A DNA stretch of 64,000 nt, from positions 124,001 to 188,000 of the IMG/VR virus record IMGVR_UViG_3300022935_000005. One strand, 5' to 3'. The notes under the pieces were generated by a model that was given only the letters and a program-made list of their open reading frames with translations, did not search any database and was not told where the DNA came from. This document shows positions 28,132-45,021 of this stretch, one piece after another; the stretch's first letter is position 1, and every line of letters starts with the position of its first letter. The translations under genes and the position numbers were made by a program.

Positions 28132-28917
28132 ATGGCAATAGTAATTAGAGCAAGCGGAACTTCACTGGAAGTCCCCAGTTCACCAACGTCAGACTTTACT
28201 ACCGGTCTGTCTGCTAGATACCTATTCACGTCAGACGCATCAGACTCGTTAGGGAACTATGATACAATGACAGCCGAATCTGCTGTAACTTATGATAGTA
28301 GTAACGGCGTTTACTTTGAGAAAATTGGAAACACAAGTAGGATAAGTCTTGGTGCTGACAGCACATCAACGTCGGCATCTAAGTTACTGAATGATATCGG
28401 TACCAACGACGGCACAATATCATTCTGGCTAAATCCTGACACGAATCAGATAGATGATTCGGGCAATGATGCTTCGTTCATCCTTGGCTCTTACGCTGGT
28501 TCGACTATAGGCACCCGAGGTCCCCAGTTTGGGTACTTCGACGATCAACCGACCGTCAATGGTGACAAGGGCGGGTGGCATTTCTTTAGCCGAGTTGGGA
28601 CCGGTTCATCCTTTGAAGGTGTTCTTTGGGAAGGAGATTCCGGGACTACTTGGGTACATATAGTATTCACTTACGATAGTGCAACCGACACAGCCAAGCT
28701 TTACAAAGATGGAAGCCTAGCAGATACGCAAACGTTTGCTAACGGTTTTCCTCAAGATCGCCGAGAGTGGATAATGAACGGTTCAGCCCAAAGCCCAACC
28801 GCTTCAACACTACAGTGGGAGGGATACTTTAAAGACCTCAGCATTTGGGACGGTCGCATCTTAACAGCAGACGAGATCAGTGATCTTTACGACAACGGTC
28901 ACGGCGGCAGCTACTAG
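28132..28917 (+). CDS. LamG/concanavalin A-like domain protein 1
   Basis: GTISFW, WVHIVFTYD, LYKDG, FKDLSIWDGRILTADEISDLY. Confidence 0.8.
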   Translation: MAIVIRASGTSLEVPSSPTSDFTTGLSARYLFTSDASDSLGNYDTMTAESAVTYDSSNGVYFEKIGNTSRISLGADSTSTSASKLLNDIGTNDGTISFWLNPDTNQIDDSGNDASFILGSYAGSTIGTRGPQFGYFDDQPTVNGDKGGWHFFSRVGTGSSFEGVLWEGDSGTTWVHIVFTYDSATDTAKLYKDGSLADTQTFANGFPQDRREWIMNGSAQSPTASTLQWEGYFKDLSIWDGRILTADEISDLYDNGHGGSY

Positions 28918-28926
28918 GGAGGAATT

Positions 28927-29667
28927 ATGCCGATAATATTTAAGGTAAGTCGCTCCATAGACTTTACAACAGATCTCGTGGCTAGGTATCTTTTTACGTC
29001 AGACACATCAGATTCGCTTGGAAATTATTCAGATGTATACGCTGGTTCTGGTGTTACCTTTGATTCATCTGGGGCACGTATGCAGACCACCTCGAACCAT
29101 AAGATCAAATTTGGCGCTGATGGTTTATCGAATCTATCGACAACATTGAATGATCTAAACGGTGTTGGGGGGACGATATCATTCTGGGTTAAGATGAACA
29201 CAGGGTACACCGCTGGTGGGACTGCTGATAATCGTTATATCTTTGGTTCTTACAGAGGCGGGTCAGCCAACCAGCGTGGGGTCCATTTTGGGTACTTTGA
29301 CCAAAACAGCGTTCTCGCTAGCGGCGCAGGCGGATGGCATTTCTTCAATAGCGCCAGTCCAGCCTCGGCCGGATATGAGGGTATCGTCGCGACTGGTGAC
29401 TCTGGTACTTCTGAGGTGCATATAGTCGTTACTATAGACAACGGTGACTTCCGCATGTACAAAGACGGCTCGCTGGTAGGTACCGAGACTGCAAGTTACT
29501 GGCCTGAATATTCTCTTGAGTGGGAGGTAAATGGCTCTGCTGGAAGCTACCTTACCTCGCGTATGTTCGATGGGTGGTTCAAGGACTTGTGCGTGTGGGA
29601 TGGAAGAGTGTTGTCAGCAGCAGAGGTAGCGGCGTTGTACAGCAATGGATCTGCTGGAAGCTTTTAG
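28927..29667 (+). CDS. LamG/concanavalin A-like domain protein 2
   Basis: GTISFWVK, HIVVT, MYKDG, LCVWDGRVLSAAEVAALY. Confidence 0.8.
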   Translation: MPIIFKVSRSIDFTTDLVARYLFTSDTSDSLGNYSDVYAGSGVTFDSSGARMQTTSNHKIKFGADGLSNLSTTLNDLNGVGGTISFWVKMNTGYTAGGTADNRYIFGSYRGGSANQRGVHFGYFDQNSVLASGAGGWHFFNSASPASAGYEGIVATGDSGTSEVHIVVTIDNGDFRMYKDGSLVGTETASYWPEYSLEWEVNGSAGSYLTSRMFDGWFKDLCVWDGRVLSAAEVAALYSNGSAGSF

Positions 29668-29675
29668 GGGGAAAC

Positions 29676-30470
29676 ATGCCAATCATATTTAAGATAGATA
29701 ATATAATCGACAACTTGGTATCTGCGATAAATTCTCGCTGGAAGCTAGAGACAAATGCTGATGACTCTGTAGGTTCCAACGACGGCACTGTTGTTTCTGC
29801 GACTGGTGCTGGTACAGACGTTTCATTTGGTACCGCTGGGGATACTTCTGCTGCAATCTTTGCGGGAGGACAAGCCAACCAGCACGTCAATGGAAAAATA
29901 TCTCTTCCAACAGCAGCAACAGATGACTTTAACTTTGAATATGGTTCTGGGACGATATCTTTTTGGGTAAGACCTGCAAACATTTCAACGTTTTACATGT
30001 TGTCAGATTACGCACCTTCATCTGAACCGGATGGGTTTGCGTTCTGGCAAGCAATGGACTACTACAGTTATAAGTACGATGAAGAGGGACCGGCCACCCG
30101 GCTTCTCTTGATAAGTTCTCCCTCATCGGACAGCTTAGCAGGATCGGTCTTAGCGGCTTCAAACACTCGGGTTTCCGCTAACAACTGGTCTCACATATGT
30201 TACGTAAAGAACCATAACGTGAGTACATTGTACATAAACGGTGAGCCGGTAGAGCAGAAAGTATGGAATGACAACAGGCCGTTTGTCAGCAGCGCTTCTT
30301 CGCTGGTACCGGGATCAACTAGAAATGTTGGCATCGGTTCTCAGACGGGAACAGTTGGGCAAAGGTATCCGGGAGCTATAAAAGATGTCATTGTTGCCAA
30401 GGGTTACGCGGCGAGCTCTCTTCAAGTCAAGCAGCTTTATTTAGCTGGTAACGAAGCACCTGATCTATAG
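29676..30470 (+). CDS. LamG/concanavalin A-like domain protein 3
   Basis: ATG 29676 (MPIIFK, as in paralogue 2); TISFWVRP, WSHICYV, LYING. Confidence 0.75.
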   Translation: MPIIFKIDNIIDNLVSAINSRWKLETNADDSVGSNDGTVVSATGAGTDVSFGTAGDTSAAIFAGGQANQHVNGKISLPTAATDDFNFEYGSGTISFWVRPANISTFYMLSDYAPSSEPDGFAFWQAMDYYSYKYDEEGPATRLLLISSPSSDSLAGSVLAASNTRVSANNWSHICYVKNHNVSTLYINGEPVEQKVWNDNRPFVSSASSLVPGSTRNVGIGSQTGTVGQRYPGAIKDVIVAKGYAASSLQVKQLYLAGNEAPDL

Positions 30471-31237: not shown

Positions 31238-31660
31238 ATGAGCTGGATACCACCGAAATCTCCTTTTGATTTACTTCAAGAAAGGTATTGGCCAGACGAT
31301 TGGAAAATTCTGATCGTCTGTCTTTTATTGAACCAAACAAGCCGTAAACAAGTTGAGCCAATGATCGAGTCATTCTTCGAGAAGTGGCCTGATCCAGAGT
31401 CAGCTTCCAATGCTGATGAAGATGAGATGCGTGATCTTGTCCGTCCTCTTGGCATGTTCAACCGCCGGGTGAAATCCATCAAAAAGATGTCTCAACAGTT
31501 CATGTCTGGTTTCGATAACGCAATCGAGCTTTATGGTTGTGGAAAGTATGCCGATGACACCTACCGAATCTTTATGAAGGGTGAGTGGAGAGATGTTGAG
31601 CCAAATGATCATGCTCTGAACGATTATCACGGATATTTACGGGAGGTGTATTCTGCCTGA
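31238..31660 (+). CDS. MBD4-like HhH-GPD mismatch DNA glycosylase (stand-alone catalytic domain)
   Basis: WIPPKSPFDLLQE...WKILIVCLLLNQTS...PLGM..RR...ELYGCGKYADDTYRIF...WRDVEPNDHALNDYH parallels the recalled MBD4 glycosylase domain. Confidence 0.85.
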   Translation: MSWIPPKSPFDLLQERYWPDDWKILIVCLLLNQTSRKQVEPMIESFFEKWPDPESASNADEDEMRDLVRPLGMFNRRVKSIKKMSQQFMSGFDNAIELYGCGKYADDTYRIFMKGEWRDVEPNDHALNDYHGYLREVYSA

Positions 31661-32465
31661 AGGTCCTGAGGTAAAGAAGACCACAGACGGATTGAGAGAG
31701 TTCTTCTTAAATGAGGAGATAACTGCTCTAGATTTCGGATCTGGAAGGTACGCCAAGAAAGAACCCATCGGCTACTCATCTTTTTGCGAAGAACTTCCAA
31801 AGCTGGTGACAGCAGTTGGATGCAAGGGAAAGTTCATCTATTTTGTGTTTGCAGACGGCAGCAGCATGTGGAACACTTTAGGCATGACAGGATGGTGGTC
31901 AGAGACAGCAGGCTATCATCCTCGCGCTGCGTTGTATGTCAATGATGATAAACATATGGTGTATAACGATATGAGGAATTTTGGGACCTTCAAGTTTGTC
32001 AGCACATACGATGAGCTAAAGAAGAAACTTAACTCCTTAGGCCCAGACTTGCTCTCTGAAGATGTTTCGTTAGATGTATTTAAGAAAAGCCTTACGAAAG
32101 GAAAGAGGGCTGAGAAACCCATCTCGCAACTCTTGATGGATCAATCTGTCGTGTCAGGAATTGGAAACTACCTCAAGGCAGAGATCTTGTACAGCTGCAA
32201 GATGTCTCCTCATCGGCTGTGTCAAGATATCTCTGATGGCGAGTTCGAGTCGCTGCTTTACGCTTCAAGAAGTATTATGAAGTTATCGTATAGCACTGGT
32301 GGTGCGACCATCCGAAATTATAAAAGCACGACTGGTAAAAATGGCATGTACACTAGAAGGTTCGCTGTCTATAATCAAAAGAGTGATCCTCTTGGAAACG
32401 CTGTAGTCAGAGAAACGACGGCTGATAAAAGGACCACACACTGGGTTCCAAGTATTCAGAAATAA
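31653..32465 (+). CDS. Fpg/Nei-family DNA glycosylase/AP lyase with zincless finger; CTG start
   Basis: CTG-CCT-GAA-GGT-CCT-GAG-GTA = (M)PEGPEV with SD GGAGGT 5 nt upstream; KGKF, GMTG, DMRNFG, H2TH LMDQSVVSGIGNYL, RTTHWVPSIQ. Confidence 0.9.
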   Translation: MPEGPEVKKTTDGLREFFLNEEITALDFGSGRYAKKEPIGYSSFCEELPKLVTAVGCKGKFIYFVFADGSSMWNTLGMTGWWSETAGYHPRAALYVNDDKHMVYNDMRNFGTFKFVSTYDELKKKLNSLGPDLLSEDVSLDVFKKSLTKGKRAEKPISQLLMDQSVVSGIGNYLKAEILYSCKMSPHRLCQDISDGEFESLLYASRSIMKLSYSTGGATIRNYKSTTGKNGMYTRRFAVYNQKSDPLGNAVVRETTADKRTTHWVPSIQK

Positions 32466-34321: not shown

Positions 34322-37300
34322 ATGCGTCGTTCATCTCTTCTTGTGCCTGACAGGTTCATCTCTCTTCATTCCCATGATGGGTTTAGTACCTTCGATGGCT
34401 TAGGCTATCCTCAAGAGCACATCGATTTTGTGATTGAGAATGGGATGGACGGGTGGTGTCTTACCAACCATGGTCACATGAATTCTTTCGGTCACGCTTT
34501 TTTGCACGCTGAAAAGATTGCGAAGCGTGGCGGAAACTTTAAGTTTGTACCAGGGTGCGAGATGTATGTCCATCCTGATCTAGATGCGTGGCGCCTTGAC
34601 ATGCAGATCCGAGAAGCTGCTAAGAAGGGTGATAAGGCCGCGCTCATGACTCTTCGTTCTCAGCGAGAAGCTATTGCTACACCACTGACTGCAATTGTTG
34701 ATGGTGATGACGAAATTGTAGATGTTGGCACCGAAGATGCTGGTCTCACTGTTGAGAATGAAGAAGAAACCAAGTCTGCAAAGTTCTATGATCCAATCAA
34801 ACGCCGCCATCATTTGGTAGTCCTTCCCAAGACGAGCGAAGGTCTCCAGCGTCTTTTTCACCTCGTCAGTAAGGGGTATCAGGAGGGCTTCTATCGCTTC
34901 CCACGTATCGACTATAAGATGCTAAAGGAAGCGGCCGCTGGTGGTCATCTGATGGTTTCTACAGCTTGTATCGGCGGTCCAATCGCTTACGAGGTTTTCC
35001 GTCATGCTCAGCAAGTTGAGTTTGATGATCTTTCGTATAAGTTGATGGATGACCCGACTTTCCGAAACAACGTCTTGACTGGCGTTGGAAATGCGTACCA
35101 GGGTCTTGTAGACGCTGTTGGTATCGATGATGTTAATCTCGAACTTCAATTTAATAAGCTTCCTGCGCAGCATCTGGTCAACCGCGCGATTATTGAGTTT
35201 GCTAACAAGAACGGGCTACAAGATAAGCTGGTAGTCACAACCGATTCTCACTACGCACGTCCAGAACACTGGCGAGAGCGTGAGCTCTATAAGAAGCTTG
35301 GGTGGCTTAACTATCGAGAGTTTGATCCCTCCAAGTTGCCGCAAGGTATTGAAGACTTGAAGTGTGAACTATATCCTAAGAACAACGAACAGGTTTGGGA
35401 TACGTACCTTAAGACAACTGACGGTATGGATTTTTATGATGATGAGGTAGTGCACAACGCCATCACTCGCCCGTATGATCTTGTCCACAACGAAATCCAA
35501 CAGATTACCCCTGATCGTTCGATGAAGCTGCCCTCTTACGTCGTTCCTGAAGGTACTACTGACGATAAGGCTCTACTTGAAGCCTGTAAGAAGGGTTTGG
35601 TCGAGCGTGGTCTTGCGCACGATGAAAAGTACATCAAGCGTCTCAAGTATGAGCTAAAGATCATCAAGGAAAAGAATTTTTCTCGATATTTCTTGACCAT
35701 GGGCGCCATCATCGATATCGCTAAGAAGGCGATGCTGGTCGGTCCAGGCCGCGGTTCTGCTGCCGGAAGTCTCGTGGCGTATGTTCTCCGTCTTACCGAC
35801 GTTGATCCATTTGAGTATGATCTCATGTTTGAGAGGTTCCTCAACCCAAGCCGTGAAGGTGCACCAGATATTGATACTGATGTAGGTGACCGTGATCTTC
35901 TTATCAACATGATGAAAGAGGAGTGGGGCGACGAAAACATCGTTCCAATCTCTAACTACAACACTTTTAAGCTTAAGTCTCTGGTCAAGGACATCTCTCG
36001 CTTTTACGGGATCCCGTTCGATGAAGTCAACAAGGCTTTGGCTCCTGTAGAGGATGACGTGAAGCGTGCCGTGTTCAAGCCCGGCACTGATAAAAACTTG
36101 TTTGTCTTGCTTTATGAAGATGCGATTGCTCACTCGAAGACATTTCGCGACTTTATTGAGAAGTACCCTGAGGTTGCCGAGCCGATTCAGGTACTCTTTA
36201 AGCAGAACAAGGCACTTGGCCGCCACGCCGGTGGATGTATTGTTTCGGAAAACATCGCTGAGCGTATGCCTCTGATTAAAGCCCGCGGCGAACTACAAAC
36301 TCCGTGGGTTGAAGGTATGAACTACAAGCATCTTGAAACCTTCGGCTGGATTAAGTTTGACCTTCTCGGTCTTGAAACACTACGTATTGTTCAGCGTACT
36401 ATCGAGCTGATTCTTCAGCGCCGGGAGGGTATCGAGGATCCGACATTCTCGCAAGTCTATGAGTGGTTCAACAATAACATGGACCCCAAGGTTCTCGATA
36501 TGGACGACCAGCATGTTTATAAGCATGTCTACGAAGAAGGTCGCTTCCCAGGAGTCTTCCAGCTGGCTGGTCGAGGTGCTAGAAACCTCTTTATGAAAGC
36601 AAAGCCCAAGAGCATCATCGACATTGCTACTCTGACATCGATTTATCGCCCGGGCCCTCTCACTGCGAAAGTAGACAAACTGTATATCCAGGCAAAGAAC
36701 AACCCTGATGATATTGACTACGGCCATCCTCTTATCAAGGAAGTTCTTGAAGAGACATACGGTATGATTGTCTTCCAAGAGCAGATCATGAAGTTGTGTT
36801 CCGTGGTGGCTGGCTTCCCGGAGGAGGAAACGGACACAGTCCGCCGGAGCATTATGAAGCGTAAAGCTTCTGAAGCCGCTGAGTCCCTTGCTAAGGCTCG
36901 AGCGATTAAGGAACAGTTTGTTGCTGGTGCCGTCAAGAATGGTGTCGACGCACAGCTTGCCGATGATCTGTACGAAAAGATTCTCTACTTCTCAGGCTAC
37001 GGTTTCAATAAGGCGCACGCTGTTTCGTACGCTATTGACTCGTACTACTGCGCTTGGCTTCTAACATACTTTGAGGAAGAGTGGCTTTGCGCTTATCTCG
37101 AGGCGATGTCTGGTAATGACAAGAAGCGTAGTAAGGCCTTTGGTGAGGTTAAGGCTCTCGGCTATCGAGTCGTTCCGCTTGATATCAATTATGCAACCAA
37201 GAAGTGGACTATCCTCGACGGTAAGAAGTTCATGCCTTCTTTCCTTTCTTGTAAGGGCGTCGGAGAATCTGCGATCGATGAGATTGTCGCTAATCGGCCG

Positions 37301-37936
37301 TACCAGAATATCGACGATCTGTTATGGGACGAGGATGGTAAGTGGCGCCACTCTAAGTTCAACAAGCGGGCAATGGAAGCGTTAATTAATATTCGCGCAT
37401 TCGAATCCATGGATCTTGTAGGCGACGGTAAGACATTCGAGAGCTATAAGCACATGCATGAAGTCATTATAAACCGGAACACCGATATCAAGAAATGGAC
37501 TAAGCGTGATCCAGAGCGAGGAAAGAGTAATTTCAAAGAGGCGCTATTGGATACTGAGGGAATCGGTAATTGGACCCGTCGTGAGATGGTCGAAAATAGC
37601 ATGAAGCATTTCGGTTCATTTAACGCCTCCACACTCGTTAATGAGGAAATTCAGGCTCGGCTCTCTAAGAAGAATGTACGTTGTATCGATGACATCGACG
37701 AGCATGATGTATATTGGTTCTTGGTGACAGACGCTAAGCCGAAGCTTACTAAAAACAAGAAGCCATATCTTTTGGTGACGGCCACAGGACTAGACGGCAA
37801 AAATATCAGGATATTCTGCTGGGGCTGGGATGGTCAGACAGAGTTGCCCCTCTACAGCCTTTGTGTTGCAGAAGTTAAGAAAAATGATTTCGGATATCAA
37901 ACTTCTATGAGTAAAGTCAAGCTTCTTCGTATATGA
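34322..37936 (+). CDS. dnaE: DNA polymerase III alpha subunit (family C)
   Basis: PHP domain (SLHSH, TNHG, DSHY), GPGRGSAAGSLVAY, PDIDTD, KFDLLGL, YGFNKAHA. Confidence 0.95.
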   Translation: MRRSSLLVPDRFISLHSHDGFSTFDGLGYPQEHIDFVIENGMDGWCLTNHGHMNSFGHAFLHAEKIAKRGGNFKFVPGCEMYVHPDLDAWRLDMQIREAAKKGDKAALMTLRSQREAIATPLTAIVDGDDEIVDVGTEDAGLTVENEEETKSAKFYDPIKRRHHLVVLPKTSEGLQRLFHLVSKGYQEGFYRFPRIDYKMLKEAAAGGHLMVSTACIGGPIAYEVFRHAQQVEFDDLSYKLMDDPTFRNNVLTGVGNAYQGLVDAVGIDDVNLELQFNKLPAQHLVNRAIIEFANKNGLQDKLVVTTDSHYARPEHWRERELYKKLGWLNYREFDPSKLPQGIEDLKCELYPKNNEQVWDTYLKTTDGMDFYDDEVVHNAITRPYDLVHNEIQQITPDRSMKLPSYVVPEGTTDDKALLEACKKGLVERGLAHDEKYIKRLKYELKIIKEKNFSRYFLTMGAIIDIAKKAMLVGPGRGSAAGSLVAYVLRLTDVDPFEYDLMFERFLNPSREGAPDIDTDVGDRDLLINMMKEEWGDENIVPISNYNTFKLKSLVKDISRFYGIPFDEVNKALAPVEDDVKRAVFKPGTDKNLFVLLYEDAIAHSKTFRDFIEKYPEVAEPIQVLFKQNKALGRHAGGCIVSENIAERMPLIKARGELQTPWVEGMNYKHLETFGWIKFDLLGLETLRIVQRTIELILQRREGIEDPTFSQVYEWFNNNMDPKVLDMDDQHVYKHVYEEGRFPGVFQLAGRGARNLFMKAKPKSIIDIATLTSIYRPGPLTAKVDKLYIQAKNNPDDIDYGHPLIKEVLEETYGMIVFQEQIMKLCSVVAGFPEEETDTVRRSIMKRKASEAAESLAKARAIKEQFVAGAVKNGVDAQLADDLYEKILYFSGYGFNKAHAVSYAIDSYYCAWLLTYFEEEWLCAYLEAMSGNDKKRSKAFGEVKALGYRVVPLDINYATKKWTILDGKKFMPSFLSCKGVGESAIDEIVANRPYQNIDDLLWDEDGKWRHSKFNKRAMEALINIRAFESMDLVGDGKTFESYKHMHEVIINRNTDIKKWTKRDPERGKSNFKEALLDTEGIGNWTRREMVENSMKHFGSFNASTLVNEEIQARLSKKNVRCIDDIDEHDVYWFLVTDAKPKLTKNKKPYLLVTATGLDGKNIRIFCWGWDGQTELPLYSLCVAEVKKNDFGYQTSMSKVKLLRI

Positions 37937-37990: not shown

Positions 37991-39013
37991 ATGCACTTAG
38001 GCACTTATGAAGGTTTCACTGACTGTTATGTTGATATGATTTCAAAGGTCATGCGTGAACCGCAATACGAATCTGCACCTCGCGGCCAGAATATCAAAGA
38101 GATCCTCGGGGCTTCATTTACAATCAAGAACCCTCGTGACAGAATTCCTTACGTCGTAGGTCGTAAGTTTAGCATGAGTTACATGGTCGCTGAGCTGATA
38201 TGGTATCTTGCGGGTGATAATAGTACTGAGTGGATATCGAAGTATTCATCCTTCTGGAAAGATATTAGTGACGACGGTGTGACTGCAAATTCAGCGTATG
38301 GTGCCCGTCTCTTTAAGCCGCATGACAAGATTGCGCAGGGCAGATATACTCAGCTCGATTACGTGATTGAAGAGCTTAAACGAGATCCTGATTCTCGGCG
38401 AGCTGTCATGCATCTAAGAGTTCCAGATGACTCTATTGATGCGAAGCTTGATGTACCTTGTACACTAGCTCTACAGTTTTTTATTAGAAACGGTGCTCTA
38501 CACCAAGTTGCTAACATGAGAAGCTCGGACTTGATTTTTGGGATTGCTTACGATATTCCCGCATTCACAATGTTTCAAGAACTGATTGCAAATGAGCTTG
38601 GCGTTGATGTGGGTACGTACACTCACACAAGCAACTCACTCCATATCTACGAACGTCATTTTGATATGGCTGAAGAGATTACTAGAACGGGCCTCGTTGA
38701 TGAATCGCTGAATCTACAACAGGCAAATGGTCCTATGCCACCGCTGGTAGGTGATATCAAAGAAGTCCAAGAGAAGGTGGCTGAAGTCTACGAGTATGAA
38801 TCCCAACTACAGCGTTGCGAGAATTTACAGGATGTAATAAACCTACATGATTTAAGCCAGTCTTTCTCTGATTCTATGTTCCGTGATTTTGCAACTATTC
38901 TTACGTCATCTCGTCTAAGAAAACTTGGTCATAAAGCGGATGCGCGAGCAATGTCCGCGCAGACGTCCTTTAGCGGATATTCTTTTAATGTCAGGAGTAA
39001 CTCTAATGCATAA
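37991..39013 (+). CDS. dCMP hydroxymethylase-like thymidylate synthase homologue (T4 gp42-like)
   Basis: ELIWY, NSAYG, DSRRAV, PCT (Cys157), MRSSDLIFGIAYD with Asp188 at the ThyA Asn177 position, SLHIYERHF. Confidence 0.85.
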   Translation: MHLGTYEGFTDCYVDMISKVMREPQYESAPRGQNIKEILGASFTIKNPRDRIPYVVGRKFSMSYMVAELIWYLAGDNSTEWISKYSSFWKDISDDGVTANSAYGARLFKPHDKIAQGRYTQLDYVIEELKRDPDSRRAVMHLRVPDDSIDAKLDVPCTLALQFFIRNGALHQVANMRSSDLIFGIAYDIPAFTMFQELIANELGVDVGTYTHTSNSLHIYERHFDMAEEITRTGLVDESLNLQQANGPMPPLVGDIKEVQEKVAEVYEYESQLQRCENLQDVINLHDLSQSFSDSMFRDFATILTSSRLRKLGHKADARAMSAQTSFSGYSFNVRSNSNA

Positions 39014-40151
39014 GAAATACGACTACCTTATCGTAGGTGCTGGCCTTTTCGGTGCCACTTTCGCTCGGCAGCTGACTGATGCGGGATACACATGTCTAGT
39101 TGTTGATAGACGGAGCCACATCGGCGGGAATGTATACAGCGAAAAGAGAAACGGCATCGATGTTCACGTCTACGGTGCTCACATTTTCCACACTAATGAT
39201 GACCGTATTTGGGACTATGTAAATCGATTTACAGAGTTTAACAATTACATTAACAAGCCTAAGGTTCGGTACGGTAACAACATCTATTCTTTCCCGATCA
39301 ATTTGATGACTCTTCACCAGCTCTGGGGTGTTACGTCACCAGCAGAAGCAGAAGCAAAGCTAAAAGAGGTCAGGATTCCTTGTGAGAATCCCGACAATCT
39401 AGAAGATTGGATTCTATCACAGGTAGGCCCGGAGATCTATCAGACGTTCATTAGGGGGTACACGATGAAGCAGTGGCAGCGTGACCCAAGAGAGCTACCA
39501 GCCTCTATTATCAAGCGGCTACCGATTCGAATGATTTTCGAAGAGAATTACTTTTTTGACAAGTACCAAGGTATTCCAGTAGGCGGGTATACGCAAATGG
39601 TCGCGAATATGTTAGAGGGTATTGAGGTCAGGACAGGGGTCGAGTATTTTACCGACCGGTCAGAGCTTGAGTCCTTGGCACACAACGTAGTATTTACCGG
39701 TAAGGTCGATGAATATTTCGATTACTGTGAGGGTGAGCTAGAGTATCGAACCCTACGGTTCGAACATGAAGAGCTTGAGGGCGATTTTCAAGGTAACGCG
39801 GTTGTGAATTATACACATCCAGAAGTGCCCTTCACACGTATTCTAGAGCATAAGCATTTTCAGCCCCAGACGGCTTCGAAGATTGAGAACACAATCGTCA
39901 CTCGAGAGTATTCTGCAGAGTATAAGCGAGGAAAGACACCGTACTATCCGATCAACGATGCGCGAAATACTGCTCTATACCAAAAGTATGCTGCCATGAA
40001 AGCTGCGACTCCTAACGTCATTTTTGGCGGGAGGTTATCTGAATACAAGTACTATGATATGCATCAGGTGATCGGTTCTGCTCTTGTTAAGGCAAGAAAA
40101 GAAATTGAAAAACGTAAGAGCAACGACTACAATATAACAGTTGAATCATAA
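39006..40151 (+). CDS. glf: UDP-galactopyranose mutase
   Basis: VGAGLFG FAD motif, HIGGN, YGAHIFHT, YFFDKYQGIP, LEYRTL, TRILEHKHF, PYYP, GRLSEYKYYDMHQ. Confidence 0.95.
   Translation: MHKKYDYLIVGAGLFGATFARQLTDAGYTCLVVDRRSHIGGNVYSEKRNGIDVHVYGAHIFHTNDDRIWDYVNRFTEFNNYINKPKVRYGNNIYSFPINLMTLHQLWGVTSPAEAEAKLKEVRIPCENPDNLEDWILSQVGPEIYQTFIRGYTMKQWQRDPRELPASIIKRLPIRMIFEENYFFDKYQGIPVGGYTQMVANMLEGIEVRTGVEYFTDRSELESLAHNVVFTGKVDEYFDYCEGELEYRTLRFEHEELEGDFQGNAVVNYTHPEVPFTRILEHKHFQPQTASKIENTIVTREYSAEYKRGKTPYYPINDARNTALYQKYAAMKAATPNVIFGGRLSEYKYYDMHQVIGSALVKARKEIEKRKSNDYNITVES
40106..40133 (+). promoter_or_regulatory. Sigma70-like promoter TGAAAA-N16-TACAAT inside the 3' end of glf
   Basis: Recurring motif upstream of the glycosyltransferase. 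Confidence 0.55.
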
Positions 40152-40162
40152 GGAGATTTGTA

Positions 40163-41218
40163 ATGAGAGTACTTTATAGCTTTTGGGGCTTTATCACCCC
40201 GCTCGAAAAGAACACAGTTGTCAACACACCAGACGGTGAGCGAGGTAACAGGGTTGATTTTGTCAATGAACTAATGTCTCGAGGGCATACTCCAGTTCAG
40301 CTGCAGAAGATGCGCGATGAAGAGCAGTACCCAGGCGTTGAGTATGATGCAACTGGCTTCCCAGATGGTGACATTCTGTACGTTGAGTGGAGGTGGCCAA
40401 CTTGGAAGAACAGCGGAGAAAACCCAGCTGAATCTGATTACAATCGACAATGCGAGGTTCTTGATTACTATCACGCTCAGGGTGTTCCGATTATTATTCA
40501 CGACGGTGATTTGAAGATGACTCCTGAGGAAGAACTCCGATGGCCAAACGCTATTCTAGCAGATGCCTGTGTGTCACCGCAGCACCAGACCCGTAATCGT
40601 ATCACAATTCCGTGGTGCAATTACCTTAAGCGGTATTTCGAGCCAGTTGAGTATTCGTACAACTACACATACGTTGGAAACAACTACGAGCGAGAGGATC
40701 CATTTGAGAAGTATTATGTACAGCCCTCTCAGCGGCTTCGCATGGCCGGCCTACAGACATCCATCTACGGTAACTGGCTTCAAAAGTCTCCAGAGCGAAT
40801 TGATCCAGCTCTTTTGCTAGCCAAGACGCCAAGCGTTGCTTTTGGGCCACGTCTTTCCTACAAGGATATTTTCGCAGTCTTAAACGAGTCGATTACTGTG
40901 ACTCACATTACCAAGCCTGCTTACACTCCTTATGGGAACATCACAGGTCGATTCTTCGAGGCAATCAAGAGTAACGTTCCAGCCTTGGTGCCGATTGAGT
41001 TTCAGCATGCTGTTCCAGTGGGCCTTAAGGATGAGTCCCTACTCGTAAGAAGCGCTGACGATGTTGTTGAGAAAGTAAAGTGGCTTTCTACATTAAATGC
41101 TTCCGAGAGAAAAGCTCTTGTTGACGCTCAAGAAGAAGCATTACGAACCGTGATAAACCCTCATCCCGGATACCGAGTTGACCTTCTTGAAAGTGTTGCA
41201 GGAGATTTTATCCGATGA
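40163..41218 (+). CDS. DNA glycosyltransferase, T4 beta-glucosyltransferase-like (GT-B fold)
   Basis: 351 aa; HDGDLK, YVGNNYERE, YGNW, NITGRFFEAIKSNVPALVPIEF, VRSADDVVEKV, RKALVDAQEEAL match recalled T4 BGT segments in order. Confidence 0.7.
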   Translation: MRVLYSFWGFITPLEKNTVVNTPDGERGNRVDFVNELMSRGHTPVQLQKMRDEEQYPGVEYDATGFPDGDILYVEWRWPTWKNSGENPAESDYNRQCEVLDYYHAQGVPIIIHDGDLKMTPEEELRWPNAILADACVSPQHQTRNRITIPWCNYLKRYFEPVEYSYNYTYVGNNYEREDPFEKYYVQPSQRLRMAGLQTSIYGNWLQKSPERIDPALLLAKTPSVAFGPRLSYKDIFAVLNESITVTHITKPAYTPYGNITGRFFEAIKSNVPALVPIEFQHAVPVGLKDESLLVRSADDVVEKVKWLSTLNASERKALVDAQEEALRTVINPHPGYRVDLLESVAGDFIR

Positions 41219-41733
41219 AAGTAGCTTTTATTGGTCCTGACATGACTGGCAAGTCGAATATTGCTGAAGCGTTATCAGAGAGGTTGTCGATTCCAGTATT
41301 CAAGAACTCTGGAGAGTGGAAGACACAGCTGGATAGCCCAAATTACTTCCTGAACTTGCTTCGTTACGGCGGTCCGTTTTTAATGGATTTTATGAAGCAG
41401 ACCAACGTAAGCGTTATTCTGGACAGGTTCTACCCTTGTGAGCTAGTATACTCTCAAGCGTTCGATAGAGACACTGATCATCAAGCCATCGCGTGGATGG
41501 ATGAGCAGTTTTCGAATGAAGGAGGAGTCTTTATTCTTTGCCTGAGAAAAGATTATTCTGGACTAGTCGATGATGTATTCCCAGAAGACCTCCCTGGGGA
41601 GAAACTAGAAGAGATTGGCTCTCTTTATAAGGATTTTGCGAAGTGGTCCCAATGTGAAGTGATGACTCTATACACTGATGATTGGGATATCAATAGACAG
41701 ATTAAAGACATAACTGATTTTTTGGGAGTTTGA
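41215..41733 (+). CDS. dNMP kinase (thymidylate kinase-like)
   Basis: P-loop GPDMTGKS; ILDRFYPCELVY. Confidence 0.8.
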   Translation: MKVAFIGPDMTGKSNIAEALSERLSIPVFKNSGEWKTQLDSPNYFLNLLRYGGPFLMDFMKQTNVSVILDRFYPCELVYSQAFDRDTDHQAIAWMDEQFSNEGGVFILCLRKDYSGLVDDVFPEDLPGEKLEEIGSLYKDFAKWSQCEVMTLYTDDWDINRQIKDITDFLGV

Positions 41734-41734
41734 C

Positions 41735-42727
41735 ATGAGTTTGCGTAAAGCGTTAGTTACAGGGTGTTGTGGTTTTATTGGATCTCATCTTACTAGGATG
41801 TTAGTAGGACAAGGTTGGTACGTAGAGGGTGTTGATGATTTGTCGAACGGCGATCTTACATCTATCGATGACCTAAAATTCAGAGCAGTACATGATTCTT
41901 TGTTACCGTTCTATAATGCTGAACCCTCGGCTGGTAGTCTTCTTGTGATGACGTGCGATTTCGCTTCGCCAGCTGTCTTAGAGAGGGTTACAACTGGAAG
42001 TTATGATGTTATTTTCCATCTTGCTGCAAACCCCCGTGTTGAGTTCTCCGTACAAAATCCAGCTTTGACAACTAATGATAACGTTCAAAAGACTGTAGAG
42101 CTGATGTCAGCCGCAAGAAATAATATCGATCGTTTTGTCTTCGCTGCTTCTTCTGCCGCATATGGAAACGGTGTAGAGTTGCCTACTACAGAACAAGAGC
42201 AGTGTAATCCCACTTCACCATATGGTCTACAGAAGCTTGTTGTAGAGCAATTCGGTAAGCTGTATAGTGAGTTATACGGCATGGATTTTGCCGCCTTGAG
42301 GTTCTTCAATGTGTACGGTCCAGGTCAGGACGGGACTAGCCCTTACTCAACAGCAATATCTGCTTGGTGCACACGCCTAAAGAAAGGTGAGCCTCTACGA
42401 AGTGATGGTGACGGCCAGCAGTCAAGAGATCTAGTCTATGTCGAAGATGTAGCTAGCGCTCTAACGCAGGTAGCGAATCATCCAGAGAGACTTGGGTTTG
42501 AGGTCTTTAATGTTGGGACCGGTATTGCCTTGACGAACAAAGAAGTTCTAGATCATCTGACAAAGCTGTTTCCTGATGCTGAAGTAAATCATGCTCCTGA
42601 AAGACCTGGCGACGTTAAGCACACTCTAGCTGCCGCTGATCACATCAAGGAGAAAATTGGGTGGGAACCTAAGGTTGAATTTTGGGATGGTCTGACAGCC
42701 ACACTAGAGTGGTGGAAGCTAGCATGA
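41735..42727 (+). CDS. NAD-dependent NDP-sugar epimerase/dehydratase (extended SDR, GalE/WbpP-like)
   Basis: TGCCGFIGSH, FHLAA, ASSAAYG, YGLQK, LRFFNVYG, GDGQQSRD. Confidence 0.9.
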   Translation: MSLRKALVTGCCGFIGSHLTRMLVGQGWYVEGVDDLSNGDLTSIDDLKFRAVHDSLLPFYNAEPSAGSLLVMTCDFASPAVLERVTTGSYDVIFHLAANPRVEFSVQNPALTTNDNVQKTVELMSAARNNIDRFVFAASSAAYGNGVELPTTEQEQCNPTSPYGLQKLVVEQFGKLYSELYGMDFAALRFFNVYGPGQDGTSPYSTAISAWCTRLKKGEPLRSDGDGQQSRDLVYVEDVASALTQVANHPERLGFEVFNVGTGIALTNKEVLDHLTKLFPDAEVNHAPERPGDVKHTLAAADHIKEKIGWEPKVEFWDGLTATLEWWKLA

Positions 42728-43155
42728 ATCGCTCTGCCTGGCGTGGCAAGTCCTCGAAAATAAAGAAGCCATGGGGCTTCGAAATAAAGTGGACCGGCCT
42801 TTTTAATGGAAAAGAGATTCATATCTCTGATGGGAAAAGAACGAGTCTGAAGTTTAACTCTCACAAAAGCGAGATTCTTTACGTGTCAGTAGGAAGAGTT
42901 AGTATTGAATGTGCAGATGAGAATCACTTTTTAGATCCCGTAGGATCCCCGTCAAGGCTCGTTGAATTAAAGGCTGGTGAATTCATTAATGTCCAAGCAG
43001 GCTGTCCTTATAGGGTGACAGCATTAATGAATAGCATAGTGTTTGAAATATCTGATAATACTTCAGATGTTGGAAGGATTATTCTAGAAGATGATTATGG
43101 GAGAGAAGTGGATCAAACTGGCATGTGGATATTTAATCCTCCAAAGTCAGAGTAA
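42724..43155 (+). CDS. Cupin-fold protein (sugar isomerase-like), metal histidines apparently absent
   Basis: KPWG...SLKFNSHKSE...GCPYRV...FEIS...LEDDYGR. Confidence 0.65.
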   Translation: MNRSAWRGKSSKIKKPWGFEIKWTGLFNGKEIHISDGKRTSLKFNSHKSEILYVSVGRVSIECADENHFLDPVGSPSRLVELKAGEFINVQAGCPYRVTALMNSIVFEISDNTSDVGRIILEDDYGREVDQTGMWIFNPPKSE

Positions 43156-43187: not shown

Positions 43188-44066
43188 ATGAGCACACTAG
43201 ATCCTAATTCAGTAAACGTAGTAATCTATCACGCCGATTGTACCGATGGATTCGGCGCCGCCTACTCTGCATGGAAGTGCTTGGGCAATAGAGCAGAATA
43301 CTACCCATGCAAGCACGGGACAGAGCCACCCAACGTGAAAGGAAAGAATGTTGTCATTCTTGACTTTTCATTTAACAATGAAACGACAAAGAAGATGATC
43401 GAAGAGTCTGCCGCACTCTTGATTATCGACCACCACAAGTCTGCGATGGTTGAGCTTCATGACATTCCTAACACGCATTTCGATATGACAAAGTCAGGTG
43501 CGATGCTTTCATGGGAATTCTTTCACCCTGGGAAAGAGCCACCGAAGTTTATCAAATACATCATGGATAGAGACTTGTGGACCTGGGAACTTGACTACTC
43601 AAAAGAGTTCTCTGCCGCGTTCGATATGGTTCCTTTTGAGTTCGAAGAATTTGAAAAGTTTGAAGATGATTCCGTCTTTGACGATGCAGTGAAGAGAGGC
43701 TCATACATTCTTGCTTATAGTAAGACTGTTATAAAGAAAGTCTGCGAAAAAGCACAACAAAGAAAACTGGATGACAAAGATGTCTTAGTTGTCAATGCAT
43801 CTCACTGGATGTCAGAGATTGGTGCTCGTCTAGCTCCTGATTGCGATTTTGCTTTAATCTGGTACTGGGATCACGAGGAGGGCCACACAAAGGTTAGTCT
43901 CCGTTCATTCCATGATACTGTTGATGTAGCTGAGGTCGCAAAAAGGTTTGGCGGCGGCGGCCATAGAAAGGCTTCCGGGTTCCAGCTCCCAAAGGGATCC
44001 CACATAGAGGATATATTTGATAAACCAAAAAAGACCTTGAGGTCCAGAAAGAAGCAGGAAGAGTAA
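43188..44066 (+). CDS. DHH/DHHA1 phosphoesterase
   Basis: YHADCTDG, ILDFS, IDHH, VSLRS, GGGGHRKASG. Confidence 0.9.
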   Translation: MSTLDPNSVNVVIYHADCTDGFGAAYSAWKCLGNRAEYYPCKHGTEPPNVKGKNVVILDFSFNNETTKKMIEESAALLIIDHHKSAMVELHDIPNTHFDMTKSGAMLSWEFFHPGKEPPKFIKYIMDRDLWTWELDYSKEFSAAFDMVPFEFEEFEKFEDDSVFDDAVKRGSYILAYSKTVIKKVCEKAQQRKLDDKDVLVVNASHWMSEIGARLAPDCDFALIWYWDHEEGHTKVSLRSFHDTVDVAEVAKRFGGGGHRKASGFQLPKGSHIEDIFDKPKKTLRSRKKQEE

Positions 44067-44069
44067 TTG

Positions 44070-44624
44070 ATGAGTAAGGTTTATTCTACGATCTTAGCCG
44101 ATCCACCCTGGATGCAACGTGGAGGTGGTAAATCAAAACGAGGTGCTGACAGGCACTACCCTTTGATGAAAGAGGCAGATATCAAGAAAGTCATGTCTGA
44201 CATGCTGGATGGCAAAGTGGCCGACAATGCTCACATGTATATGTGGGTCGCCAATAACCACCTTCCTGAAGCGCTGAGAATAATAGAGCATCTGGGTTTC
44301 AAATATATCACCAATCTTGTATGGGCTAAGACTCATTTCGGTTTAGGAAGGTACTTCCGCGGCCAGCATGAGCTGTGCATATTCGCTACTAAGGGCCGCG
44401 GCTTTTCTGCTAGGACACAAGCTAATAACGTTCCCTCCCTTATTGGGGGTAAACTAGTTTCTCCTACCCGCCACAGTGCGAAGCCCGCCGAGATGTACGA
44501 ATTGATAGAAGGTAGAAGTGAGGGCCCCTTTCTGGAGCTGTTTGCGAGGACGAGACGCCCCGGCTGGGATGCGTTGGGTAATGAAGTACCTGAGGAAAAA
44601 GATGCAAAGACCGAACTGGGATGA
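44070..44624 (+). CDS. MT-A70 family N6-adenine (or N4-cytosine) methyltransferase
   Basis: ILADPPW, HYPLM, GLGRYFRGQHE, HSAKP, LELFAR, WDALGNE. Confidence 0.9.
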   Translation: MSKVYSTILADPPWMQRGGGKSKRGADRHYPLMKEADIKKVMSDMLDGKVADNAHMYMWVANNHLPEALRIIEHLGFKYITNLVWAKTHFGLGRYFRGQHELCIFATKGRGFSARTQANNVPSLIGGKLVSPTRHSAKPAEMYELIEGRSEGPFLELFARTRRPGWDALGNEVPEEKDAKTELG

Positions 44625-45021
44625 CATATGGATGAAGTTTGCCTATTTGATTGCTGACCGGTCATATGACCCGCGTCACAAGGTGGGTTCTGTAGTTGTT
44701 ACTGACTCAAACACACAAGTGCTAGCAATAGGCTACAATGGAAATTATTCAGGCGGTCCAAATGAAGTCGAGTCAAACACACCTGGCGAGTCTGGCATGA
44801 TCCACGCGGAGATCAATGCAATGATAAAGCTAGACTTCAATAATCCGAATAGAAAGATAATGTATTTGACGCTAAGTCCTTGTCGAGCCTGCGCGAAAGC
44901 TATTGTCAATGGTGGCATTTCTGAGGTGGTGTACAGCGAAGAATATCGCGATACTTCTGGCTTAGAACTACTAAGTCACGCAGGAGTCAAAGTCAGAAGG
45001 CACGATATTAAGCAACTCTAG
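44602..45021 (+). CDS. dCMP deaminase
   Basis: RPNWD, GYNG, HAEINA, PCRAC. Confidence 0.9.
   Translation: MQRPNWDDIWMKFAYLIADRSYDPRHKVGSVVVTDSNTQVLAIGYNGNYSGGPNEVESNTPGESGMIHAEINAMIKLDFNNPNRKIMYLTLSPCRACAKAIVNGGISEVVYSEEYRDTSGLELLSHAGVKVRRHDIKQL

What the first reader, a model, noticed from the sequence alone, without database searches (positions are those of the whole stretch)
39006..42727. Which sugar? Glf signature favours Gal (or Ara) furanose over GalNAc
Glf has YGAHIFHT, with His at the position that is Arg (HIFRT) in the bifunctional UDP-GalNAc mutase of Campylobacter, so UDP-Galp is the likelier substrate. The SDR (ASSAAYG, YGLQK, LRFFNVYG, GDGQQSRD) resembles WbpP/GalE 4-epimerases. 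Bacterial UGMs also accept UDP-L-arabinose, so arabinofuranosyl-hmC remains an alternative if the SDR is a UDP-xylose 4-epimerase.
Basis: partly seen in the sequence, partly recalled or inferred. Interest (0 to 1): 0.6.

Follow-up and report, generated by a model that had tools for sequence, protein, structure and literature searches.

The report
Phage operon for galactofuranosyl-hydroxymethylcytosine DNA
A large uncultured marine-type phage carries one tight operon that most likely replaces cytosine with hydroxymethylcytosine and decorates it with galactose in its rare five-membered-ring (furanose) form, a DNA sugar coat not yet described on this base.

Summary
Window 39006-40151 encodes a UDP-galactopyranose mutase that scores above the NCBIfam equivalog cut-off and is close to E. 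coli Glf (phmmer E 6.6e-129). It has His62 and Lys170 where the C. jejuni UDP-GalNAc mutase has Arg59 and Arg168. Window 41735-42727 encodes an extended SDR with all four quoted motifs. Its nearest solved relatives are UDP-hexose and UDP-HexNAc 4-epimerases.

The two genes sit in one overlapping operon: thymidylate-synthase homologue, Glf, GT-B glycosyltransferase, small nucleotide kinase, SDR, cupin. The thymidylate-synthase homologue has the hydroxymethylase signature (L143D, Asp169 kept, N177D). It lacks the D169N signature of 5-hydroxycytosine synthases, so hmC is the predicted base. The glycosyltransferase model matches T4 beta-glucosyltransferase best (Z 22.6).

Across 58 related metagenomic loci, kinase, GT, TS and SDR are the conserved core. 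Glf was added once, directly upstream of the GT, in a single GT clade, and the SDR was retained there.

Best reading: UDP-Glc to UDP-Galp to UDP-Galf to Galf-hmC DNA (confidence about 0.55). GalNAc is disfavoured on the mutase side but not excluded by the epimerase. L-arabinose is unlikely. This is a new variant of a known kind; Rhizobium phage RL38J1 (Gal on 5-hydroxycytosine, own Glf) is the closest precedent.

The parts
37991..39013 (+). Thymidylate-synthase homologue, predicted dCMP hydroxymethylase (makes 5-hm-dCMP)
   Evidence: Pfam Thymidylat_synt 126 bits. Best solved relative is MilA CMP 5-hydroxymethylase, E 1.8e-40. LDVPCT (38447-38464) gives L143D plus the catalytic Cys. MRSSDLIFGIAYD (38516-38554) keeps Asp169 and has N177D. 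RL38J1 gp216, a proven 5hoC synthase, has MRSQN at the same place.
39006..40151 (+). UDP-galactopyranose mutase (Glf). His62 (39189-39191) and Lys170 (39513-39515) correspond to C. jejuni UNGM Arg59 and Arg168
   Evidence: TIGR00031 365 bits, above the 303.75 cut-off. 1i8t E 6.6e-129 and 4mo2 E 2.9e-121 with printed alignments. FAD motif VGAGLFG; YRTLRFE and GGRLSEYKYYDM are conserved. The start overlaps the TS stop by 8 nt.
40163..41218 (+). GT-B glycosyltransferase, predicted DNA hmC glycosyltransferase (donor predicted to be UDP-Galf)
   Evidence: Weak Pfam Glyco_trans_1_2 hit. AF2 model pLDDT 90.9. Top structural match is T4 beta-glucosyltransferase: Foldseek E 1.9e-10; VIA Z 22.6, rmsd 3.7 over 306 residues. 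187 metagenomic homologues, all unnamed. GGAG lies 8-11 nt upstream of the ATG.
41215..41733 (+). Small P-loop nucleotide kinase, predicted hm-dCMP kinase
   Evidence: GPDMTGKS P-loop. phrog_761 thymidylate kinase, E 1.6e-7. The only PDB hit is SPbeta YorR 2axp/3kb2, E 0.016, the same hit reported for DLP3 gp78 nucleotide kinase in PMC13326640 Table 1. ATGA overlap with the GT stop.
41735..42727 (+). Extended SDR, predicted UDP-hexose 4-epimerase (UDP-Glc to UDP-Galp)
   Evidence: Pfam Epimerase 179 bits. The best NCBIfam model is GalE TIGR01179 at 152 bits, below its 262.3 cut-off. PDB 6dnt, 4zrm, 6wjb, WbgU, WbpP. GxxGxxG, Ser139/140, Tyr163, Lys167; no dehydratase Asp-Glu; gatekeeper GDVKH-T (Thr297).
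42724..43155 (+). Small cupin, conserved after the SDR; role unknown
   Evidence: ATGA overlap with the SDR stop. AF2 pLDDT 92.4. Only generic cupin matches. Present in Glf-plus and Glf-less relatives.
43188..44066 (+). DHH/DHHA1 phosphoesterase, conserved neighbour
   Evidence: Pfam DHH/DHHA1. phrog_4771, E 4e-77. 42-84% identical in most related loci.
44518..45021 (+). dCMP deaminase, nucleotide-pool neighbour
   Evidence: Pfam dCMP_cyt_deam_1, E 2.5e-19. Conserved downstream in relatives.
34322..37936 (+). DnaE-type DNA polymerase III alpha, syntenic anchor of the cluster
   Evidence: phrog_405, E 4e-227. Adjacent to the cluster in nearly all 58 related loci.

Best explanation
The operon TS-Glf-GT-kinase-SDR-cupin (37991-43155) is a DNA hypermodification cassette of a roughly 281-kb uncultured phage.

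The proposed pathway has four steps. (1) The TS homologue hydroxymethylates dCMP. The small kinase, together with host NDP kinase, takes it to hm-dCTP, and the phage polymerase incorporates it. (2) The SDR epimerises host UDP-glucose at C4 to give UDP-galactopyranose. (3) Glf contracts the ring to give UDP-galactofuranose. (4) The compact GT-B enzyme, which is the size and fold of T4 beta-glucosyltransferase, transfers Galf to the hydroxymethyl group of hmC in DNA.

Shown here: gene identities, residue signatures, operon structure, fold and synteny. Inferred: every substrate and product. Glf-less relatives with the same kinase-GT-TS-SDR core would attach the SDR product directly, presumably galactopyranose.
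For: Glf:
- It scores above the equivalog cut-off.
- It has E. coli-type His/Lys at the two sites that are Arg/Arg in the UDP-GalNAc mutase.
- This signature is invariant for His and near-invariant for Lys in the 22 phage Glf homologues.

SDR:
- It carries the 4-epimerase catalytic set and lacks the dehydratase or decarboxylase acid residues.
- Its best family model is GalE, and its best structures are UDP-hexose/HexNAc 4-epimerases.

TS homologue:
- L143D, Asp169 and N177D are present in every family member. By the D169N rule of PMC13326640 this is the hydroxymethylase type.

GT:
- The top fold match is T4 BGT, and T4 AGT also scores Z 20.6.

Operon and genome context:
- Genes overlap (ATGA) or lie within 11 nt of each other.
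- Kinase + GT + TS + SDR are conserved beside PolIII in 58 loci.
- Glf is present in one monophyletic GT clade (UFboot 96), always immediately upstream of the GT, and all 13 distinct members retain the SDR.
- SDR pocket motifs are unchanged between Glf-plus and Glf-less phages.
- Six large Glf-less records have no GLF domain anywhere.
- It is the only GT in the operon. All other GTs lie more than 70 kb away.

Precedents:
- RL38J1 has its own Glf and a galactose proximal to the base.
- Epimerase-dependent GTs that decorate 5hmC are described in bioRxiv 10.1101/2023.12.21.572611.
Against: - No chemistry was done.
- The SDR misses the GalE equivalog cut-off (152 against 262 bits). Its closest solved relatives (6dnt, PelX, WbgU, WbpP) prefer N-acetylated substrates, and its gatekeeper is a small Thr, so UDP-GlcNAc is not excluded.
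- The GT resembles generic GT4-type GT-B enzymes almost as well as T4 BGT (Z 21-22), and no sequence model links it to known DNA glycosyltransferases.
- It shows no detectable sequence similarity to RL38J1 gp215.
- GTs of the Glf-less sister clade are still about 56-62% identical, so a donor switch from pyranose to furanose is assumed, not shown.
- The host is unknown.
Confidence: 0.55

Rival explanations
1. Uncoupled modules. The SDR is a UDP-GlcNAc 4-epimerase that makes UDP-GalNAc, and Glf acts on host UDP-Galp. The DNA would carry GalNAc, or both GalNAc and Galf, for example through a promiscuous or processive GT.
For: The closest solved SDR relatives are HexNAc 4-epimerases (6dnt, 6wjb, WbgU, WbpP). 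The gatekeeper is Thr, as small as Ser/Cys in groups 2 and 3. Epimerase/GT pairs giving HexNAc-5hmC exist. L056/L058 carry Glf without any SDR, which shows the two modules can work apart.
Against: There is only one GT in the operon. Glf is inserted directly in front of that GT. The T. maritima and Thermus UDP-Glc epimerases score equally well, and the best family model is GalE. If Glf alone fed the GT, the SDR should have decayed, yet it is conserved in all 13 Glf-plus lineages.
Confidence: 0.15
2. GalNAc furanose. UDP-GlcNAc goes to UDP-GalpNAc, then to UDP-GalfNAc, which is transferred to hmC, as in the C. jejuni capsule pathway.
For: An SDR with a small gatekeeper could accept HexNAc.
Against: Glf has His62 and Lys170 where the bifunctional C. 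jejuni enzyme has Arg59 and Arg168. Recalled from Poulin et al. 2010 and 2014, not re-read here: those two arginines confer UDP-GalNAc use. His is invariant in all phage homologues, and Lys is present in all except L056/L058, where the motif was not matched.
Confidence: 0.05
3. Pentose route. The SDR is a UDP-xylose 4-epimerase, and Glf turns UDP-L-Arap into UDP-L-Araf, giving L-arabinofuranosyl-hmC.
For: UGMs accept UDP-arabinopyranose as a poor substrate (established knowledge; mentioned in PMC7662398). Some Bacteroidota make UDP-Xyl (recalled), and the nearest named Glf relatives are Bacteroidota.
Against: The 92%-complete record has no UDP-glucose dehydrogenase, no UXS-type SDR and no nucleotidyltransferase. 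Known phage arabinosylation uses D-Araf on 5hoC through an unrelated pathway. Distant systems with Glf but no SDR (L056/58, RL38J1) must take a common host sugar nucleotide, and RL38J1 is experimentally galactose.
Confidence: 0.05
4. The GT uses the SDR product (UDP-Galp) on DNA, as in Glf-less relatives. Glf instead serves another purpose, such as a second sugar, a virion glycan, or depletion of host UDP-Gal.
For: The GT is about 56-62% identical to GTs of Glf-less sister phages. A large glycan island with eight other GTs lies elsewhere in the genome.
Against: Glf is always the gene immediately upstream of the GT, or of kinase-GT, in three independent acquisitions. The Glf-plus clade has fixed substitutions (F265, K269) flanking the invariant R263/E266 of the C-terminal donor-binding domain.
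Confidence: 0.12

Closest known systems
Rhizobium phage RL38J1 (Pootjesviridae) galactosyl/glucosyl-5-hydroxycytosine system (PMC13326640)
   Same: It has a phage-encoded UDP-galactopyranose mutase (gp84, 45% identical to the window Glf). It also has a TS homologue, GT and nucleotide kinase in the same order (gp216-215-214). Galactose is the base-proximal sugar, and UDP-Galf is the proposed donor.
   Different: The RL38J1 TS homologue carries D169N and makes 5-hydroxycytosine with an ether-linked sugar. The window TS keeps Asp169, the hydroxymethylase type. RL38J1 Glf is unlinked (gp84) and it has no epimerase. Its GT and kinase show no detectable sequence similarity to the window's. It has extra glucosyltransferases. 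Its polymerase is T4-like, not DnaE-type.
T-even phage glucosyl-hmC system (gp42 dCMP hydroxymethylase, gp1 kinase, alpha/beta-glucosyltransferases)
   Same: The logic is the same: a TS-family hydroxymethylase, a dNMP kinase and a post-replicative GT-B transfer to hmC. The window GT model is closest to T4 BGT (Z 22.6) and close to AGT (Z 20.6).
   Different: T4 uses host UDP-glucose directly and has no sugar-nucleotide tailoring genes. The window adds an epimerase and a pyranose-furanose mutase. GT sequence identity to BGT is only about 14%.
Epimerase-dependent 'subclass II' GT clusters of metagenomic phages (bioRxiv 10.1101/2023.12.21.572611)
   Same: An adjacent sugar epimerase and GT act on 5hmC. 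There, GT activity depended on the partner epimerase, yielding Hex-, HexNAc- or HexA-5hmC.
   Different: Those clusters make 5hmC post-replicatively with a C5-methyltransferase and a TET-like dioxygenase. Here it is made through a TS homologue plus kinase. That paper mentions no mutase (0 occurrences).
RB69/DLP3 arabinosyl-5-hydroxycytosine system
   Same: It attaches a furanose sugar to a C5-oxygenated cytosine, and it clusters a TS homologue, nucleotide kinase (YorR-like) and GT-B transferases.
   Different: The sugar is D-Araf, built from ribulose-5-P by an isomerase, a kinase/uridylyltransferase and a HAD phosphatase. The base is 5hoC. None of those genes is in the window or the record.
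E. coli K-12 Glf and C. jejuni UNGM (Cj1439c)
   Same: The window Glf aligns end to end with both (E 6.6e-129 and 2.9e-121) and keeps the FAD and active-site Arg/Tyr motifs.
   Different: It matches E. coli, not C. jejuni, at the two substrate-selecting positions. Its context is DNA modification rather than O-antigen or capsule synthesis.

Membership tests
UDP-galactopyranose mutase (TIGR00031 / PF03275) | Whole-protein score above the curated equivalog cut-off | tested here: met
   365.2 bits against a 303.75 cut-off; Pfam GLF 261 bits.
UDP-galactopyranose mutase (TIGR00031 / PF03275) | N-terminal FAD Rossmann motif and conserved active-site Arg/Tyr positions | tested here: met
   VGAGLFG. 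KRLPIR (E. coli Arg170), YRTLRFE (Arg278) and GGRLSEYKYYDM are aligned and identical to 1i8t.
UDP-galactopyranose mutase (TIGR00031 / PF03275) | Interconverts UDP-Galp and UDP-Galf with reduced FAD | not testable with these tools
   Needs an enzyme assay.
Bifunctional UDP-GalNAc/UDP-Gal mutase (C. jejuni UNGM type) | Arg at positions 59 and 168 (C. jejuni numbering) | tested here: not met
   The window has His62 and Lys170 (HIFHT, IIKR) against 4mo2 HIFRT, IIRR. His is found in all 22 phage homologues and Lys in all but L056/L058. The role of these residues is recalled from Poulin et al.
UDP-hexose 4-epimerase (extended SDR, GalE/WbpP type) | GxxGxxG NAD site, Ser/Thr-Tyr-Lys catalytic set, and no 4,6-dehydratase Asp-Glu or UXS Glu after the Ser | tested here: met
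   TGCCGFIGSH; ASSAAYG; YGLQK. Aligned to 6dnt, 4zrm and 6wjb.
UDP-hexose 4-epimerase (extended SDR, GalE/WbpP type) | Score above the GalE equivalog cut-off | tested here: not met
   TIGR01179 152.2 bits against 262.3. It is nevertheless the top-scoring NCBIfam model.
UDP-hexose 4-epimerase (extended SDR, GalE/WbpP type) | Substrate class from the gatekeeper residue (bulky Tyr = non-acetylated only; Ser/Cys = HexNAc allowed) | tested here: inconclusive
   The window has Thr297 (GDVKHT), aligned to Ser in 6dnt, 4zrm and 6wjb. Thr is near-invariant across the phage family. It does not exclude either substrate class.
dCMP hydroxymethylase (T4 gp42 / MilA type) versus 5hodCMP synthase | Catalytic Cys146; N177D (cytosine); L143D/E (non-methyl product); Asp169 retained (hydroxymethylase) versus D169N (5hoC synthase) | tested here: met
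   LDVPC and MRSSD...YD match MilA in the printed alignment. RL38J1 gp216 shows MRSQN. Nearly all family members that gave a motif have Asp169. The rule is taken from PMC13326640.
T4 beta-glucosyltransferase-like DNA glycosyltransferase | Compact two-Rossmann GT-B fold superposable on BGT over its full length | tested here: met
   Z 22.6, rmsd 3.7, 306 of 351 residues, ranges 1-344 against 1-351. Generic GT4 enzymes score within 1 Z.
T4 beta-glucosyltransferase-like DNA glycosyltransferase | Sequence-level family membership and activity on hmC DNA | tested here: inconclusive
   Only a weak PF13524 hit and no PHROG or NCBIfam hit. About 14% identity to BGT. Activity is not testable here.

The most novel reading that the evidence does not exclude
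A widespread clade of uncultured marine-type jumbo phages carries 5-(D-galactofuranosyl-oxymethyl)cytosine, a hexofuranose on hmC that has not been reported. Their Glf-less sister phages, with the same epimerase-GT-TS-kinase core, carry the pyranose form. A single gene insertion (Glf) plus a few substitutions in the GT donor helix (F265, K269) would then have switched the ring form of a DNA sugar. That would be a natural experiment in how phages diversify DNA glycans to escape modification-dependent nucleases.
Probability: 0.4. Interest if true: 0.7.

Novelty: new variant of a known kind. Interest (0 to 1): 0.55.

Why it matters
Glycosylated cytosines are the main way large lytic phages evade restriction enzymes, CRISPR and type IV nucleases. 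Each new sugar defines a new target or escape for defence systems and a possible reagent for DNA labelling.

Galactofuranose is absent from mammals and rare on nucleic acids. The only phage precedent (RL38J1) puts galactose on 5-hydroxycytosine, and the furanose form there is proposed from the presence of a mutase gene.

The locus offers a compact five-gene cassette that can be tested in E. coli. Natural Glf-plus and Glf-less variants of the same glycosyltransferase make it a good system for asking how donor ring form is selected.

Tried and rejected
- Megablast of the cluster against the phage collection found nothing, and tblastn of the GT also found nothing.
- Direct BLASTP of the window GT and kinase against RL38J1 gp215 and gp214 showed no similarity. 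Homology to that system holds only for the TS and Glf.
- The cupin (42724-43155) was tested as a possible sugar-nucleotide isomerase or epimerase that could change the sugar. Profile search and fold search gave only generic cupins, and no conserved metal ligands were seen. It is left unassigned.
- tblastn of the SDR against plasmids, intended to reach characterised references (WbgU, S. meliloti Uxe/ExoB), returned only generically named haloarchaeal and lactobacillal SDRs at 38% identity or less. No reference tree of the SDR was built, because characterised sequences could not be obtained by reference and typing them in was ruled out.
- A literature search for the 'hexagonal box' specificity model found no usable paper. 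A search for the Arg59/Arg168 work found only a review citing Poulin et al. 2014, so that point rests on recall plus the printed alignment.
- The L005 'Glf-like' ORF (38% BLASTP) is an FAD oxidoreductase without a GLF domain by Pfam and was not counted as Glf.
- A 4,6-dehydratase or decarboxylase reading of the SDR was rejected, because the acid residues after the catalytic Ser are absent.

Full report
**What is there**

The window is bases 124001-188000 of a single 280,913-bp IMG/VR virus record. CheckV puts it at 92% complete, and it is classed as linear. All long ORFs are on the + strand. The record has no near relative among deposited phage genomes. Its DnaE-type polymerase (34322-37936) is at most about 30% identical to any of them.

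Directly downstream of the polymerase lies a run of overlapping or nearly abutting genes:
- TS homologue, 37991-39013.
- Glf, 39006-40151. Its start overlaps the TS stop by 8 nt.
- GT, 40163-41218. GGAG lies upstream of its ATG.
- Kinase, 41215-41733, with an ATGA overlap.
- SDR, 41735-42727.
- Cupin, 42724-43155, with an ATGA overlap.

A DHH phosphoesterase, an MT-A70-like methyltransferase and a dCMP deaminase follow.

**Checking the observation**

Glf scores 365 bits on the UDP-galactopyranose mutase equivalog model, whose cut-off is 303.75. It aligns end to end with E. coli UGM 1i8t (E 6.6e-129) and with the C. jejuni enzyme 4mo2 (E 2.9e-121). In those printed alignments the window and E. 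coli read HIFHT where C. jejuni reads HIFRT. At the second site the window and E. coli read IIKR where C. jejuni reads IIRR. The phage enzyme is therefore E. coli-like at both positions. From my recollection of Poulin et al. (2010, 2014), these are the positions that let the C. jejuni enzyme use UDP-GalNAc. That functional statement is recalled, not re-read; a review in the library only confirms the citation.

The SDR has the NAD motif, the Ser-Tyr-Lys set and no dehydratase or decarboxylase acid residues. Its best solved relatives are UDP-hexose and UDP-HexNAc 4-epimerases: 6dnt, T. maritima GalE 4zrm, PelX 6wjb, WbgU and WbpP. Its best NCBIfam model is GalE, but at 152 bits it falls below the 262-bit cut-off.

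**Which base**

A 2026 paper (PMC13326640) shows that RB69-type 'arabinosyl-hmC' is in fact D-arabinofuranosyl-5-hydroxycytosine. The 5-hydroxycytosine is made by TS homologues whose diagnostic change is D169N in E. coli ThyA numbering.

The window TS homologue has L143D and N177D, meaning a cytosine substrate and a non-methyl product. It keeps Asp169, exactly like MilA, a proven CMP hydroxymethylase and its best solved relative. RL38J1 gp216, a proven 5hoC synthase, shows Asn at that column when aligned to the window protein. Nearly all related phage loci that yielded a motif have the same DVPC / MRSSD / YD signature. By this rule hmC is the predicted base.

A MazG-like pyrophosphatase at 262 kb and the dCMP deaminase fit a T4-like remodelling of the nucleotide pool.

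**The transferase and kinase**

The 351-residue GT has only a weak Pfam hit, but it has 187 unnamed metagenomic homologues. An AlphaFold model built on 22 of them is confident (pLDDT 90.9). Its best match by Foldseek and by VIA-align is T4 beta-glucosyltransferase (E 1.9e-10; Z 22.6, rmsd 3.7, 306 residues, both proteins full length). T4 alpha-glucosyltransferase scores Z 20.6. Generic GT4 enzymes score within about 1 Z. The fold therefore supports a DNA glycosyltransferase but does not prove one.

The kinase's only PDB hit is SPbeta YorR. The NAR paper lists the same hit for the nucleotide kinase in the DLP3 cluster.

**Comparative genomics**

Context was examined in 58 related loci, drawn from IMG/VR and from public assemblies. 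Three of them are 100% identical copies of this phage from three different metagenomes.

Kinase, GT, TS homologue and SDR occur together, next to the DnaE polymerase, in nearly all loci. Glf does not. It is present in every locus whose GT is at least 69% identical to the window's, and absent from the rest apart from two distant exceptions, L053 and L056/L058.

An ML tree of 45 distinct GTs places all 13 Glf-linked GTs of the main group in one clade (UFboot 96 / SH-aLRT 88). That clade is nested among Glf-less lineages, and the tree needs three changes in all. Whole-record searches support the pattern. Six large Glf-less records (143-278 kb) have no GLF domain anywhere, while four Glf-plus records have exactly one, at the cluster.

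In every acquisition Glf sits immediately upstream of the GT or of kinase-GT. The SDR is retained in all Glf-plus members of the main clade. Its pocket motifs (HLAAxPRV, SSSxxYG, Y[AG]LQK, GDVxxT) are the same with or without Glf.

Compared with the sister and outer clades, the Glf-plus GT clade has fixed substitutions at F265 and K269. These flank the invariant R263/E266 in the C-terminal, donor-binding half. Further clade-specific residues are M50, Y158, L293 and W307.

**Which sugar**

Four points favour galactose.
- Both mutase specificity residues are of the UDP-Gal type, and this is conserved in the phage homologues.
- Retention of a conserved 4-epimerase after Glf was inserted in front of the only GT in the operon is most simply explained if the epimerase feeds the mutase: UDP-Glc to UDP-Galp to UDP-Galf.
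- RL38J1 and L056/58 have Glf but no epimerase, so they must draw on a common host nucleotide sugar. In RL38J1 the base-proximal sugar is experimentally galactose.
- The phage record has no UDP-glucose dehydrogenase and no nucleotidyltransferase. Its only other SDRs are a GDP-mannose dehydratase and a fucose-synthase-like enzyme in a distant glycan island. It therefore cannot make UDP-xylose itself.

Against certainty, the epimerase gatekeeper is Thr, aligned to Ser in three HexNAc-capable enzymes, so UDP-GlcNAc is not sterically excluded. I could not place the SDR in a tree with characterised enzymes. My estimates are:
- Coupled Galf-hmC model: about 0.55.
- Uncoupled or GalNAc-containing variants: about 0.2 together.
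- Galp on DNA with Glf serving another role: about 0.12.
- L-arabinose: about 0.05.

**Comparison with what is known**

The logic is that of T-even glucosyl-hmC, with sugar-nucleotide tailoring added. Epimerase-dependent GTs on 5hmC have been shown for metagenomic clusters that make 5hmC by a methyltransferase/TET route. A phage Glf associated with galactosylated cytosine is described for RL38J1, but on 5hoC.

Three things are new here. The TS-route hmC is combined with epimerase, mutase and GT in one operon. The predicted product is Galf-hmC. The evolutionary pattern shows Glf added to a conserved core. A full-text search for galactofuranose with phage hypermodification returned only the RL38J1 paper.

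**Limits**

Nothing here measures chemistry. The host and the environment are unknown. Tara-sourced homologues and Bacteroidota-like Glf relatives are only hints. The cupin is unassigned.

Noticed in passing
window 31238-31660 and 31692-32465: An HhH-GPD base-excision glycosylase and a complete Fpg/Nei-type glycosylase (N-terminal, H2TH and C-terminal domains) sit just upstream of the polymerase. This is an unusual pair for a phage predicted to carry modified cytosine.
   Followed up: no
window 28132-30470: Three tandem ORFs each carry a Laminin_G_3 / concanavalin-A-like lectin domain. They may be paralogous receptor-binding or decoration proteins.
   Followed up: no
G000:C1 about 36-54 kb (outside the window; locus L063): A large glycan island holds four GT2, a GT10 and a GT11 (fucosyltransferase-like), two GT4, a sulfotransferase, GDP-mannose 4,6-dehydratase, a fucose-synthase-like SDR and a DegT-type aminotransferase. 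This suggests a fucose/perosamine-type, possibly sulfated glycan of unknown target.
   Followed up: partly
L005 4691-7460; L038 11004-12802; L041 5061-6833; L053 7352-9453; L034 8997-10001: Relatives swap the sugar-tailoring cassette around the same kinase-GT-TS-SDR core. Examples are a second divergent SDR, an FAD oxidoreductase without a GLF domain plus a classical short-chain dehydrogenase (L005), a second SDR plus a 270-residue unknown (L038/L041), and a second SDR plus Glf (L053). The family probably makes several different DNA sugars.
   Followed up: partly
L006 1-2123: A close relative (GT 81% identical) has a HAD hydrolase and a 238-residue NTP_transferase upstream of the polymerase. 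The window phage lacks both. They may be an extra sugar-activation module.
   Followed up: no
L001 1027-3291; L007 1-6078: The DnaE-type polymerase gene of some relatives is split and carries intein-splicing domains.
   Followed up: no
window 44067-44624: A methyltransferase-like ORF (phrog_359; MT-A70 in relative L006) follows the DHH gene. It is only 29-34% identical in most Glf-plus relatives while its neighbours are 80% identical, so it looks like a fast-evolving or replaced gene.
   Followed up: no
window 39006-40151 (Glf homologues; phage tblastn): The nearest named cellular Glf homologues are Bacteroidota (Pontibacter 66%, Thermonema 64%), and several homologues come from Tara samples. 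This hints at a marine Bacteroidota-associated origin. Separately, Glf genes occur in 19 Aeromonas and about 30 Rhizobium/Agrobacterium/Sinorhizobium phage records, where their role in DNA modification could be examined.
   Followed up: no
L009, L010, L011: The same phage, with 100% protein identity over all nine cluster genes, was assembled independently from three IMG metagenomes (3300023170, 3300020054, 3300018421). It is therefore a real and recurrent virus.
   Followed up: partly
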